A DNA stretch of 61,193 nt, counting the filler, from Hausera hauseri (Eukaryota): NCBI GenBank assembly GCA_046269625.1. It is 9 parts of 9 records of this genome, joined end to end, with 100 filler letters (N's around TTAATTAATTAA, not from the genome) between each part and the next. Parts side by side here need not be neighbours in the genome. Positions count along the whole stretch, not along the records: positions 23,987 to 28,674 come from JBJURY010474799.1; 8 more parts are not named here. One strand, written 5' to 3'. The translations under genes were made by a program, and so were the position numbers. Below the pieces are notes generated by a model, which worked only from the letters and a program-made list of their open reading frames with translations, searched no databases and was not told the DNA's origin. This document shows positions 23,987 to 28,674 of this stretch, piece by piece. Position 1 is the stretch's first letter. Each line of letters opens with the position of its first letter.

Positions 23987-24366
23987 AATTATAAAACAAT
24001 AGTTTTGTACAGATCGCCTAACAGCCTTCAACTTTTCGGTGAACCTTGGCTATTCACGTTTTCTCAGTCTTCCGAACCCTGCCAGGTATCATTCAATCAT
24101 TATTTTACACATTCTATTTCTATATCATGCACATTCATTCAACATTTTATACATTCTATACAACCCTTATTTTATCAACCAGTACACACAGTGCAACCAA
24201 CATGAACACACATTTATACACATTCATACACACATATATACATTATATATATTTATATATATACATTATATACAATTTTAACTCCCCTAACTTCTCCACT
24301 TAATCTTCTTGATGTTGGCCGGATTCCCCAACTAATCAGTCAGGTTCCAACATTTCCCCCCTCCTT
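23987..24366 (-). mobile_element. Polypurine tract (24353-24366) and LTR start (24352) of dynein-carrying element, copy B
   Basis: AAGGAGGGGGGAAA|TGTTGGAACCTGACTGA on the minus strand; first about 35 nt shared with the LTR starting at 27173. Confidence 0.75.
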
Positions 24367-25900
24367 GGGGCAATCCGGTCTTTAAATATATCATCTTCCG
24401 CCCAATCACCAGGACCAACATGATCCAACATCTTCTGTTTGGTTTTATTCGGATCATTATCTTTTTCAGGTTTTCTTTTTTCCATTACATAAATGGCTTC
24501 CATCCCGAGTTTAATCCATCCAGGAGGATTTTGTATAGTTTTGACAACATTTATACCAGCAAGTTTCAGTCTGTCTATTGCAGGTAACATTTCATTGAGA
24601 TGCGGTAGAGCTTCAGCTAAATTAGTCCCACCTTTATCAATCGGAGCATTACAATTCATAGCTTCAGGTTCGTCAGTAAATTCTTGAGTTTGTGACGAAC
24701 TTTTTGGAGAGATACTTATTTTTTCAACCAATCTCGTACCTTTTGATTCATCCTCTAAATCCAAAATACTACTACCTTCTGAAATACTTTCGTCTAGTTT
24801 ATATAACTCATTTTGATTTGGTTCGGTCTTGTTTTTATCTACGTTTTTGTTAATCGCTTGACCAACAAGATTTTTCTCCTTTTCGTACACACTCTTCTTC
24901 AACTGATTGGCAGCATCAATCATTATTCTTTCTAAATTATCATTTTCTGCCTTATTTATTGTTTTATGCTGGGTTTGAAACATTTCATTCTTAGACGTTA
25001 CGTAATTATATTCAAGTAAGATTAACTCACTTGTAAACTCTTTGCACTCCGAATCACTATTTTCGAACTGTGAATTGTTTGTTACGTTAGAATCTCCGGT
25101 CACATTAACATAATCCTTAATTAATAAGCATAGCTTCAAATTACGATTAGTTATTACTCCAACTTATGTTTCCTCCTCCTTTTCCATTGTATTGTCTTTC
25201 GTAATTAGTACATCATTTTCCACCAACTTGTCATCTGAGTCTGAATTTTGTAGAAATTCATCAGCAGAAATTGAATTTTCAACATGTGATATTTGATCAA
25301 CAGGATTAGATATCGCTACTTCCTTTCTGGTTCTCGACAGAATATCATCATTGTGTTCTTGTTCACTTAAACATGTACCAAGTAATTTGTATTTTATATT
25401 TCTCACCAACTTAGAATCGTTCAATTTAAAATATTTTTCTTGAACTTCCATGTAATTCTCATCCTTAAGTATTTTGAAATTGCTTAAATTATTTGTTTGT
25501 CGATTCCCTTCAGATGATCCAAAATTAGTAAGAATGAAATTGTTGCTTTCTACTGGGCTACATTTACCTCTATTCTCCAGACAATCGATTCAGATGGTAC
25601 TTGATTCCTTTTCACCTACAGATTTATCTACTGAAACCTTTAAATTACTTTTAGTATTTGATTGATTTTTGTCGCCTAAAATATTTTTCCGCAGTTGTTT
25701 TGACACATAAAACTTGTAAATTGTTATGTATTTTATTGTTGTTAAATTCAGGAAAGACAGGAATATTTCTTGCGGCTTCGTCCTCGAAATTTTCCATTTT
25801 GTAAGGAGTAATGTTCTTCTTCTCTTTCTGCAGAACGATTCTGACTGGTGTTTGAGGACTACTTCCATTATATGAAACAACTTAGTTCTCTTGTAGTGAT
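24336..25900 (-). pseudogene. Copy B of an acidic low-complexity ORF ending in a truncated axonemal dynein stalk fragment (about 24412-24645)
   Basis: NLAEALPHLNEMLPAIDRLKLAGINVVKTIQNPPGWIKLGMEAIYVM..KMLDHVGP; collinear with 27153-28674. Confidence 0.8.
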
Positions 25901-26514
25901 TCAGTACCTAAAGTACAACATATTGTGTGTGCCAGGTTCAAAAAGATGAGTAGACATTAGTGTCGAAATATCTGCCCAACAGATACTATTTGATGAAGAT
26001 CTTAGTAAGATCGAAATATTAGAACGTTCGAATCCAGCAACATTATTGTTCTCTAAAAGGCATATATGTATAATTTATTAATAATTTTATGTTTCTCCTA
26101 AAGAACCATACTGATAACTTATAACATACTCTGCATATTCTTTGAAATTTCTAGGTTGACAATACGAACTTACTTGATTAGGACACATTACCGTTTCAAT
26201 TATCCATGTTTTCCGGCTGTGGTAATCAATTGTTTCATCTTCCGTCTTATCTCGTCGATTATTGTCGAATTGCTAACACCTTGACTTCTACTGACTCATT
26301 ACACTTCTCACCTAGGTTAGTATGACATTGCACTCCAACTCCATTTAACCAAGGGGCCATGGTTAGATTGTTGTGCACACACAGTACTCAATGGATAGAA
26401 TTTTGCTCAGAAGTGACATCACGATATTCAGGAAATTAATGCATGATATTCAGGGGAACGCCCACTGACTGCTGGTATTCAGATTCAGTCCGTTTTCCAA
26501 TTCTGAGTACAGCA

Positions 26515-27187
26515 TGTTCTGGTACCCCGCCTTTGTCTTTATAATTGTACCCGTAACAGTAAGGTTTTCAATTGAATATATTAGACAATTTTATTAACAT
26601 CATTTGTCATAACGAACTATATTCAGCTATGGTTTTGTAAATTGCGTAATTTACAAATATTAAACAATGATTACTAAGTCGTTCGGAGAGCATCTTGGAC
26701 CAATTTTGGATAGATAGAAGAATCAGAATGCCATGAATGAGGCGATTCATCTCACAATGGTGTAGACACATGTGTAGGTCATGTGCTCACCAACCTCTAT
26801 TGAATGTAATATTGCAGTGAGAATAATAGTGTATTAATAGAGACTGCCTCTGCTCCCTGGTTCTTCGAAAGCCGACAGGAATCATGACACTCTTACTGAT
26901 AATCACAACACTTTGCGCCTTCATATTTCCACACCTATATTACATTTTCTAGCACACAGGTTTTCTACAAACAATTTCCATTCTTCACAAAATTCACATG
27001 ATAAGCAAAATATATGTACAATGTACCTATATACAACGTCACCATTCACTCGCTCCGTTCTGTACATATACACACATGCCCACACACATACCCTATATAT
27101 ACTATATACAACTTTCTTCTTCTCTATTTCTTCTGTCCTCCGGATTACGCAACTAGTCAGTCGGGTTCCAACATTTCCCCCCTCCTT
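26515..27187 (-). mobile_element. Polypurine tract (27174-27187) and putative LTR (about 27173-26515)
   Basis: Purine tract ending GGGGAAA|TGTTGGAACC; AATAAA near 26591-26596; imperfect terminal inverted repeat GGTACCAGAACA at the distal end. Confidence 0.65.
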
Positions 27188-28674
27188 GGGTAATCTGGCC
27201 TCTAAATGCATCACCATCCACCCAATCTTCTGCATGTTGCAAATTTATTTGGGTTTTCTTCAATCTACCAATGATTTCTGCTAATTCGGTTTCGGCTTGT
27301 ACAAGTTTAGTCTTTTTTGACGCTACTACATTTGCAATACAATTGTGCGATTCCATCTCCAACATCCATCGATAGAAACCTTCAGTTGTCGGTGATGTAT
27401 ATAAAACTTTAGCTGGATCAAATTCCGAGTTAGAGATGTGTTCCTTGCGAAATTGTAGCATAACTGGAACCGGAATGTCATATTTTTCGTGTTCTCGTAA
27501 ATATGGGAAAAACTGTAGATCACTTAGAAGCTCTTTCGAAGGACCCCAATAATCGAGCATCTTTTGTTCGGGTTTATTTGGATCATTAACTCTTTCATAT
27601 TTTATCTCTCTCATTATACAGATGGTTTCCATCACGAGTTTAACTCCACCAGGTGGATTTTGCATAGTTTTAACAGTAGTGATATCAGCAAGTTTCTGTG
27701 TGTCTACAGCAGGTAATACTTCATTGAAATGTGGTAAAGTTTCAGCTAGATCAGTCCCACCTTTATCAATCGGAGCTTTACAATTTGGTATATTTCTCAT
27801 ACTTTCGGTTTCGTCAGTAAATTCCCACGTTTGTGATAAACTTTCCGGAGAAATACCCTTCTCTTTATGCAATCCAGTGCCTCGCGATTTACCCTCTGAA
27901 TACAAAATACTACTACTTTCGAAAGTGTTTTCGTCTAGTTTGCCTAACTCATTTCAATTTGGTTCGATATTGTTTTTGCCTAAGTTTTTATTAATTTCTT
28001 GAGAAATAAATTTTTCTCCTTTTTCGTCTACACTCTCTTTCAATTGTTCAGTAGTATCAATATTTAGTTTTTGTAAATTATCATTTTCTTCGTTATTTAG
28101 AACCCTATGCTGAGTTTTCAGCTTTTCGTTCTCAGACATCACAGAATGATTATCAATTAAAACCACCTTACTTGTAAAATCTTTACACACCGAACCAATA
28201 CTTTCTAATTGTGTATCACTTCTCATGTTAAATTCTCCGGACACATGAATATAATCCTTAACTAATAAGCATGGCTTCAAATTACGATTAGTTATTACTC
28301 CAACATGTGTTTCCTCCTCCTTCTCCATTGTATTGTCTTTCGTAATTAGTACATCATTTCCTACCAACTTGTCCTCTGAGTCTGAATTTTGTAGAAATTC
28401 ATAAGCAGAAATTGAACTTTCAACATGTGATGCTTGATCAACAGGATTAGACATTGCTACTTCCTTTCTGCTTTCGACAAAATATCATCATTTTGTTCTT
28501 GTTCACTTGAACATGTAGTAGGTAATTTGTGTTTTACATTTCTCACCAACTTGGAATCGTTCGATTTAAAATATTTACCTTGAACTTCCATATAATTCTC
28601 ATCCTTAAGAATTTTGGAATTGCATAAATTATTTGTTTGTCAATTCCCTTCGGATGTTCCAAAATTAGTAAGAC
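27153..28674 (-). pseudogene. Copy A: element ORF ending in an axonemal dynein heavy-chain stalk/microtubule-binding domain (about 27225-27775, inner-arm DNAH3/7/12-like)
   Basis: DLAETLP..ADITTVKTMQNPPGGVKLVMETICIM..DYWGPSKELLSDLQF..YDIPVPVM..EFDPAKV..EGFYRWMLEME..VVASKK is the characteristic dynein stalk-MTBD sequence; ORFs 27954-28454 and 27153-27905 are in the same frame, split by one stop. Confidence 0.9.

What the first reader, a model, noticed from the sequence alone, without database searches (positions are those of the whole stretch)
27153..28674. LTR element whose ORF ends in a captured axonemal dynein stalk/microtubule-binding domain
Seen: an acidic, non-dynein ORF runs in frame into about 180 aa of dynein heavy-chain sequence, then through the polypurine tract into a TG-starting LTR. 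The captured part is intronless and covers the microtubule-binding domain with adjacent stalk coiled coil, with no AAA modules. Known: this is the part of dynein that contacts microtubules. Inference: a retroelement family acquired a stand-alone microtubule-binding module, possibly to tether its particles or RNA to microtubules, spindles or sperm axonemes. I know of no described equivalent. This copy has a premature stop.
Basis: partly seen in the sequence, partly recalled or inferred. Interest (0 to 1): 0.85.

Follow-up and report, generated by a model that had tools for sequence, protein, structure and literature searches.

The report
Orphan ORF with captured dynein domain
Two neighbouring, broken copies of an otherwise unknown open reading frame really do carry the microtubule-binding tip of an axonemal dynein motor. 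Nothing in the piece shows that they sit in an LTR retroelement or that they still work.

Summary
The sequence observation holds. On the minus strand, an uninterrupted 250-codon frame (27153-27905) runs from non-dynein sequence into about 180 residues of dynein stalk plus microtubule-binding domain (MTBD). It matches DNAH12 residues 2599-2775 at E 4.8e-48, and the fold model matches the DNAH7 MTBD. It then runs into a 24-residue non-dynein tail.

No other part of a dynein is present in the piece. The premature stop is real (27954-27956).

A second, diverged copy of the same fusion lies 3.14 kb away on the same strand (24336-25907, 81% identical). It has its own stops and an in-frame 309-nt loss of the second half of the MTBD.

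The LTR reading is not supported:
- No paired repeat, no TG...CA termini and no gag, pol or RT signal were found in any frame.
- The two copies stop being alike about 90-110 nt after the stop codon, inside a TG/TA simple repeat.

Divergence between the copies fits neutral decay. No relative of the non-dynein part was found anywhere.

Best reading: dead copies of a lineage-specific chimeric ORF that captured a dynein MTBD, probably as cDNA. The carrier (local duplication or some mobile element) is unresolved.

The parts
27153..27905 (-). Copy 2, uninterrupted 250-codon frame: about 45 non-dynein residues, the dynein stalk/MTBD segment, a 24-residue non-dynein tail, and the stop at 27153-27155
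27228..27776 (-). Dynein-derived segment of copy 2 (ORF residues about 44-226). It holds the last 1-2 heptads of CC1, the whole MTBD with a beta-hairpin flap of the DNAH7/12 type, and about 30 residues of CC2. There is no intron.
   Evidence: DNAH12 2593/2599-2775; tblastn; strands 104-107 and 115-118
27954..28454 (-). Copy 2, upstream orphan Glu/Asp/Asn/Lys-rich part (166 codons), ended by the premature stop at 27954-27956
   Evidence: no Pfam or PDB match
28455..28674 (-). Copy 2, further upstream part in another frame (1-nt deletion near 28473 relative to copy 1; stop at 28640-28642). It is cut off by the edge of the piece.
27134..27190 (-). Best-conserved block between the copies (about 92% identical). 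It holds a purine run with G6 followed by TGTTGGAACC, then stops in all three frames (TGA, TGA, TAG).
   Evidence: (D6)
27065..27133 (-). 3' tail of copy 2: a poorly conserved purine-rich stretch, then a TG/TA simple repeat. Likeness to copy 1 ends here.
24336..25907 (-). Copy 1 of the same fusion (81% nt identity over 1137 nt). It has stops at 25590-25592 and 25164-25166, and a 1-nt indel near 24372. It lacks the 309 nt that correspond to 27231-27539 of copy 2 (second half of the MTBD and CC2), and that loss is in frame.
24313..24369 (-). Copy 1 counterpart of the conserved 3' block
25908..27064 (.). Spacer between the copies. It has no repeat of either flank, no protein-family match in any frame, and no tRNA or Rfam family.

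Best explanation
The piece holds two same-strand neighbours, 3.14 kb apart. They are independently broken copies of one lineage-specific, intronless chimeric reading frame of at least about 560 codons when whole.

The order of parts is:
1. An orphan Glu/Asp/Asn/Lys-rich N-part.
2. About 180 residues copied from a single-headed inner-arm axonemal dynein heavy chain (DNAH12/7/3 type): the tip of the stalk and the whole MTBD.
3. A short Trp-acidic tail.

Shown:
- The fusion, its two copies and their separate breaks.
- The absence of any other dynein part.
- The absence of LTR and retroelement hallmarks in the piece.

Inferred:
- The dynein piece entered an existing ORF as a partial cDNA (retroposition or template switching), because it is intronless and flanked in frame on both sides by non-dynein sequence.
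- The unit was then duplicated. I commit to a local tandem duplication whose end lies in the TG/TA simple repeat.
- Both copies have since drifted as pseudogenes.

When whole, the product would have been a non-motor protein able to dock on microtubules or axonemal doublets through a DNAH7-type MTBD. With almost no CC1 to pair with CC2, the registry switch that tunes dynein's affinity could not operate. Today neither copy can make the whole protein.
For: - Fusion and dynein identity.
- Second copy, collinear across the junction between the orphan part and the dynein part.
- The breaks differ between the copies, so their common ancestor was open.
- The frame is far longer than chance allows. From the piece's base composition I estimate a stop about every 12 codons on this strand (my rough figure, not tool-derived), against 250 and 274 open codons.
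- Decay: copy 2 keeps 34/59 strongly conserved MTBD columns, and each copy has its own losses. dN/dS is 0.54, and 13% of neutral simulations score as low or lower. Three stops were seen against about 7 expected under neutrality, which is not significant.
- No LTR pair, no TGTTGG...CCAACA termini and no RT, IN, PR or gag in any frame.
- Likeness between the copies ends in a simple repeat about 90-110 nt past the stop.
- Mosaic divergence (dS 0.12 in the 5' part, 0.51 in the middle) fits gene conversion between neighbours.
Against: - Only 4.7 kb is visible. What lies upstream of copy 2 is cut off, so a pol gene or a 5' LTR could lie just outside.
- Two dead copies and no live one is more typical of mobile-element debris than of a host gene pair.
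- The best-conserved block between the copies looks like a retroviral polypurine tract followed by a TG-starting end.
- A variable simple-repeat tail is also what some non-LTR elements carry.
- The cDNA origin is inferred without knowing the intron pattern of the parent dynein gene.
- I could not count copies in the genome.
Confidence: 0.45

Rival explanations
1. One reading: the ORF is an accessory last gene of an LTR retroelement. The dynein MTBD was transduced into it, and a polypurine tract and 3' LTR follow the ORF.
For: - The conserved block AAGGAGGGGGGAAA + TGTTGGAACC sits at the ORF end and is the best-kept stretch between the copies, at about 92% against 81% overall.
- The ORF is an orphan, intronless and present in more than one dead copy.
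- LTR elements are known to capture host gene fragments (PMC13317346, PMC4299795; abstracts only).
Against: - There is no second LTR in the piece.
- Past the block the two copies lose likeness within about 60 nt, although LTRs of one family should stay as alike as the ORF.
- No CCAACA terminus follows the TGTTGG.
- No gag, PR, RT or IN was found in any frame of the 4.7 kb, including the 1.2 kb upstream of copy 1.
- Purine runs are common on this strand.
Confidence: 0.15
2. The copies are 3' ends of a non-LTR retrotransposon, or of sequences retroposed by one. The unit ends in a variable TG/TA simple-repeat tail, and copy 1 may be 5'-truncated near 25907.
For: - Likeness between the copies ends inside simple repeats of different length.
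- A conserved block just upstream of the tail could be a 3' recognition element.
- Upstream of 25907 the frame of copy 1 is closed.
Against: - No RT or endonuclease signal was found.
- The predicted stem in the conserved block is weak, at -9.9 kcal/mol with only two sequences.
- The 5' limit of the unit cannot be seen because copy 2 is cut.
- No target-site duplication can be called in the simple repeat.
Confidence: 0.2
3. The dynein segment is an exon of a real dynein heavy-chain gene that has been broken up by insertions.
For: The sequence identity to dynein is unambiguous.
Against: - The segment is joined in frame to non-dynein sequence on both sides.
- It occurs twice with the same non-dynein neighbour.
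- 29 full-length dyneins find nothing else in the piece.
- A profile of the AAA4 end plus CC1 does not match the upstream part: 1.0 bit, and 204 of 1000 shuffles do as well.
- 25 of 59 near-invariant positions are changed.
Confidence: 0.03
4. A live family exists elsewhere in the genome (host gene or element), and these two are merely its dead members. The intact protein tethers something to microtubules or axonemes.
For: - The ancestor of the two copies had an open frame of at least 500 codons.
- The MTBD half shared by both copies was close to canonical before they split, because most losses are private to one copy.
Against: - No protein like the orphan part was found in 5.8 billion clustered proteins, within the length and word limits of that tool.
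- Two metagenome scans also found nothing.
- No sign of constraint was seen since the split.
Confidence: 0.12

Closest known systems
Axonemal inner-arm dynein heavy chains DNAH12 / DNAH7 / DNAH3 (stalk tip and MTBD)
   Same: About 180 residues align end to end with DNAH12 2599-2775 (E 4.8e-48) and DNAH7 2646-2843. The predicted fold matches the DNAH7 MTBD on microtubules (6rza, TMt 0.81) and includes the beta-hairpin between H2 and H3.
   Different: There is no AAA ring, linker or tail. Only 1-2 heptads of CC1 and about 4 of CC2 are present. 25 of 59 strongly conserved columns are changed. The segment is flanked by non-dynein sequence.
Sdic cluster of Drosophila melanogaster (chimeric gene built from a dynein intermediate-chain gene and AnnX, amplified in tandem)
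   Same: Both are a young chimeric gene built partly from a dynein subunit gene and then duplicated into same-strand neighbours (PMC3469443).
   Different: Sdic comes from an intermediate chain, keeps introns and is expressed and functional in sperm. Here the donor is a heavy-chain MTBD, both copies are broken and expression is unknown.
Host gene-fragment capture by LTR retroelements (retroviral transduction; plant LTR-element gene capture; capture in crocodilian ERVs)
   Same: An intronless host fragment is placed in frame inside a foreign ORF (PMC13317346 and PMC4299795, abstracts; the rest is my own knowledge).
   Different: None of the defining LTR-element features could be shown here.
Chimeric retrogenes such as TRIM5-CypA (from my own knowledge, not tested here)
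   Same: A partial or whole cDNA of one gene lands inside another reading frame and gives it a new binding module.
   Different: No poly(A) trace or target-site duplication is visible around the dynein segment, and the recipient ORF is an orphan.

Membership tests
LTR retrotransposon / endogenous retrovirus | Two long terminal repeats in direct orientation | tested here: not met
   Self-comparison finds only the two ORF copies. Nothing downstream of either copy recurs upstream. The piece is only 4.7 kb, so an LTR outside it is not excluded.
LTR retrotransposon / endogenous retrovirus | LTR termini TG...CA with short inverted repeat | tested here: not met
   TGTTGG occurs at 27173 and 24352. 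No CCAACA follows on that strand in the spacer.
LTR retrotransposon / endogenous retrovirus | Polypurine tract directly before the 3' LTR | tested here: inconclusive
   A conserved 14-purine run with G6 lies next to TG, but there are 9 purine runs of 12 or more on this strand in 4.4 kb.
LTR retrotransposon / endogenous retrovirus | gag / protease / reverse transcriptase / integrase | tested here: not met
   No such Pfam match in any open stretch of 34 aa or more that was scanned, at E up to 10. The region upstream of copy 2 is cut off.
LTR retrotransposon / endogenous retrovirus | Primer-binding site and target-site duplication | not testable with these tools
   No element ends are defined and no host tRNA set is available. 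ARAGORN finds no tRNA in the piece.
Dynein heavy chain | Microtubule-binding domain at the stalk tip | tested here: met
Dynein heavy chain | Six AAA+ modules, linker and tail | tested here: not met
   tblastn of 29 full-length dyneins hits only the MTBD segments.
Dynein heavy chain | Full antiparallel stalk (CC1 and CC2 of about 100 residues each) | tested here: not met
   A BLASTP extension into an 'NYVT'-like motif is not backed by the AAA4-end/CC1 profile: 1.0 bit, 204/1000 shuffles as good. CC2 stops after about 30 residues.
Non-LTR retrotransposon | Reverse transcriptase / endonuclease ORF | tested here: not met
Non-LTR retrotransposon | 3' end in poly(A) or a simple-repeat tail of variable length | tested here: inconclusive
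   TG/TA simple repeats of different length lie where likeness between the copies ends. With only two copies this is weak.
Processed retrocopy of a host mRNA | Lack of the parent's introns | not testable with these tools
   The dynein segment is one open 530-nt stretch. The parent gene of this genome could not be fetched.
Processed retrocopy of a host mRNA | Poly(A) remnant and target-site duplication | tested here: not met
   The dynein segment runs straight into further coding sequence, with no A-run.

The most novel reading that the evidence does not exclude
Elsewhere in this genome an intact, expressed family (a retroelement or a young host gene family) encodes the orphan acidic protein fused to a stand-alone inner-arm-dynein MTBD. 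It would use the MTBD to anchor its product, particle or RNA on microtubules or sperm axonemes. The two copies here would be its dead relatives.
Probability: 0.12. Interest if true: 0.75.

Novelty: new member of a known kind. Interest (0 to 1): 0.35.

Why it matters
Three literature searches here and my own memory turned up no stand-alone dynein MTBD outside a dynein heavy chain. Viruses and retroelements are known to reach microtubules by binding dynein subunits, not by carrying dynein's own microtubule contact.

If a live version of this fusion exists, it would be a natural 'motor-less' MTBD protein. It would also be a new example of domain capture creating a cytoskeleton-binding module.

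As seen here, the finding is two decaying copies with an unknown carrier. Its present value is as a lead for a genome-wide search, not as a demonstrated system.

Tried and rejected
1. More copies or relatives of the fusion.
- The search for homologous proteins with the 250-aa ORF, the 274-aa copy 1 frame and the 140-aa best-conserved orphan part returned only one ordinary dynein fragment, P0161.
- Two metagenome scans and two viral scans found nothing.
- The ESM Atlas gave nothing for the orphan part and only MT-domain fragment clusters for the ORF.

I masked them in the local tblastn and worked beside them.
- The two runs found are coded. They hold 0.39 and 0.09 of the words and could not be examined further.

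3. The idea that the orphan part is a decayed AAA4 end plus CC1. It was raised by a BLASTP extension and rejected by the profile-against-shuffles test and by PDB phmmer.

4. Purifying selection. NG86 dN/dS of 0.54 looked below 1. A neutral simulation with the observed transition bias gives a mean of 0.67 and a range of 0.46-0.94. The claim is dropped.

5. RNA elements. There is no tRNA. The only Rfam row is mir-297 at 27.9 bits against a gathering score of 90, inside the TG repeat, which I take as chance. The stem-loop in the conserved 3' block is weak.

6. Helitron-like end (CTAG after a hairpin). I considered this by eye only and rejected it because likeness between the copies continues past it.

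7. The alignment tools print a consensus line on their own. I did not use, store or search with any of them.

Full report
**What is there**

The piece (23987-28674) is AT-rich, at 29-43% G+C. All long open frames lie on the minus strand.

Its middle part is unmistakably the tip of a dynein heavy-chain stalk:
- Pfam MT (PF12777) matches at E 7.6e-6, just above the curated cutoff.
- phmmer against solved structures gives DNAH12 at E 4.8e-48 (query 50-226 = DNAH12 2599-2775). I count 84 identical of 177 on the printed alignment. DNAH7 follows at 8.6e-42 and DNAH3 at 5.7e-37.
- A full HMMER pass over 1.84 billion representatives finds 1582 matches. The long ones are dynein heavy chains hit at the same relative place. 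The best named one is a chytrid dynein.
- An AlphaFold2 model built on 31 natural MTBD-bearing proteins has pLDDT 82.7. It shows a long helix, the globular helical bundle, a beta-hairpin at 104-118 and a long return helix.
- Foldseek puts the DNAH1 stalk+MTBD crystal structure first. The microtubule-bound DNAH7 MTBD follows at TM 0.81, rmsd 2.9.

The hairpin is the 'flap' of the DNAH7-type single-headed inner-arm dyneins. That assignment is from my own knowledge of that structure.

**Limits of the dynein part**

Homology starts about 8-14 residues before the conserved CC1/H1 proline. It ends about 30 residues into CC2, at ORF residue 226.

A BLASTP alignment of copy 1 to a full dynein stretched further upstream through an 'NYVT'-like motif. 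I tested this with a profile of the AAA4 end plus CC1 from 30 dyneins. The upstream parts score 1.0 and 1.6 bits, and 204 and 84 of 1000 shuffles do as well. PDB phmmer finds nothing for these parts. So the upstream Glu/Asp/Asn/Lys-rich part is not recognisably dynein.

Twenty-nine full-length dyneins find nothing else in the piece by tblastn.

After residue 226 the frame continues for 24 non-dynein residues that both copies share. The dynein piece is therefore embedded in the ORF, not terminal.

**A second copy**

Self-comparison shows 24411-25533 matching 27540-28673 at 81% over 1137 nt. It also shows 24225-24450 matching 27065-27261.

Copy 1 (24336 to about 25907, minus strand) has the same orphan part running in frame into the same dynein segment. 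Relative to copy 2 it lacks 309 nt (27231-27539), which is the second half of the MTBD plus CC2. The loss is in frame.

The breaks are private to each copy:
- Copy 2 has stops at 28640-28642 and 27954-27956, and a 1-nt deletion near 28473.
- Copy 1 has stops at 25590-25592 and 25164-25166, the 309-nt loss, and a 1-nt indel near 24372.

Their common ancestor therefore had an open frame of 500 or more codons. From the piece's base composition I estimate a stop about every 12 codons on this strand by chance (a rough figure of mine, not tool-derived).

**Is it under selection?**

Pairwise NG86 gives dN 0.174, dS 0.321 and omega 0.54, with a bootstrap interval of 0.40-0.74. I then simulated neutral divergence with the observed distance and transition share, dropping stop codons in the same way. 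That gives omega 0.67 on average, with 2.5-97.5% limits of 0.46-0.94, and 13% of runs at or below 0.54.

Three stops were observed in the shared 375 codons, against about 7 expected for two neutral lineages. That is suggestive but not significant.

Against 82 dynein MTBDs, copy 2 keeps only 34 of 59 columns that are 80% or more conserved. In the half both copies share, most losses are private to one copy.

I read this as a near-canonical MTBD at the time of the split, followed by drift in both copies.

Divergence is mosaic: dS is 0.12 in the first 128 codons and 0.51 in the next 159. That fits recombination or gene conversion.

**The LTR claim**

The best-conserved stretch between the copies is a 57-nt block around the stop codons (27134-27190 and 24313-24369, about 92% identical). 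It reads as a purine run with G6, then TGTTGGAACC, then stops in all three frames.

Everything else that defines an LTR element fails or cannot be tested here:
- No second LTR is present.
- No CCAACA terminus follows the TGTTGG.
- Likeness between the copies falls away within about 60 nt of the block. It ends in TG/TA simple repeats of different lengths.
- No gag, protease, RT or integrase match appears in any open stretch, even at E up to 10.
- Purine runs of 12 or more occur nine times on this strand.

A simple-repeat tail where likeness ends is at least as typical of non-LTR elements. It could also simply mark the breakpoint of an unequal exchange.

With copy 2 cut by the edge of the piece, the 5' limit of the unit is unknown.

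**Reach of the searches**

No relative of the orphan part, or of the fusion, was found:
- Nothing in the 5.8-billion-cluster protein search, within its length and word limits.
- Nothing in two metagenome scans and two viral scans.
- Nothing in the ESM Atlas.

Two coded runs hold 0.39 and 0.09 of the words. I kept those places out of all later search and alignment calls.

So the copy number in the genome, which is the decisive fact, could not be obtained.

**Verdict**

A dynein MTBD has been lifted out of its motor and set in frame inside an orphan ORF, and that fusion was copied at least once.

The interpretation goes beyond the evidence. Nothing shows an LTR element, and both visible copies are dead and drifting.

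I rank the readings as follows:
- Dead neighbours made by local duplication of a chimeric, cDNA-derived ORF: 0.45.
- Some non-LTR or other mobile carrier: 0.2.
- An LTR element: 0.15.
- A live family elsewhere: 0.12. This overlaps the readings above.
- A real dynein exon: 0.03.

The closest described parallels are the Sdic chimeric dynein-subunit cluster of Drosophila (PMC3469443) and host-fragment capture by LTR elements (PMC13317346 and PMC4299795, abstracts). Three literature searches found no described stand-alone MTBD fusion.

Noticed in passing
window 27156-27227 (-) and 24339-24410 (-): The non-dynein tail after the MTBD keeps a Trp flanked by acidic residues in both copies (pattern D-W-x-[DE]-x-D-x-F). 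From memory this resembles the Trp-acidic motifs that bind kinesin light chain. This was not tested.
   Followed up: no
window 27150-27162 and 24331-24343 (minus strand): Inside the conserved 57-nt block both copies carry TGA, TGA and TAG spaced so that all three frames are closed within 11 nt.
   Followed up: partly
window 27228-27231: The right edge of the 309-nt stretch missing from copy 1 falls within one codon of the end of dynein homology in copy 2. The loss therefore removes exactly the rest of the dynein insert. It could be chance or a recombination-prone junction.
   Followed up: partly
window 25140-25535 versus 24655-25139 (and their copy 2 counterparts): Divergence between the copies is mosaic: dS is 0.12 in the 5' part and 0.51 in the middle part. 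This suggests gene conversion or recombination.
   Followed up: partly
window 26237-26536: A G+C-richer island (0.43 against about 0.32 around it) lies in the spacer. It has no protein-family, RNA-family or repeat match.
   Followed up: partly
window 24990-25046 (-): Copy 1 reads CKEF...YNYVT, which BLASTP lines up with the CK.FH...NYVTPTSYLE motif at the end of dynein AAA4. The profile test does not support homology. Copy 2 is more diverged at that place.
   Followed up: yes
window 24085-24160 (+) and 24142-24162: Degenerate 34-nt direct repeats containing ACATTCTAT units lie downstream of copy 1. Their nature is unknown.
   Followed up: no
window 27009-27093 (-): A sub-threshold Rfam match to mir-297 (27.9 bits, gathering score 90) lies inside the TG/TA repeat. 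I take it for a low-complexity chance match.
   Followed up: partly
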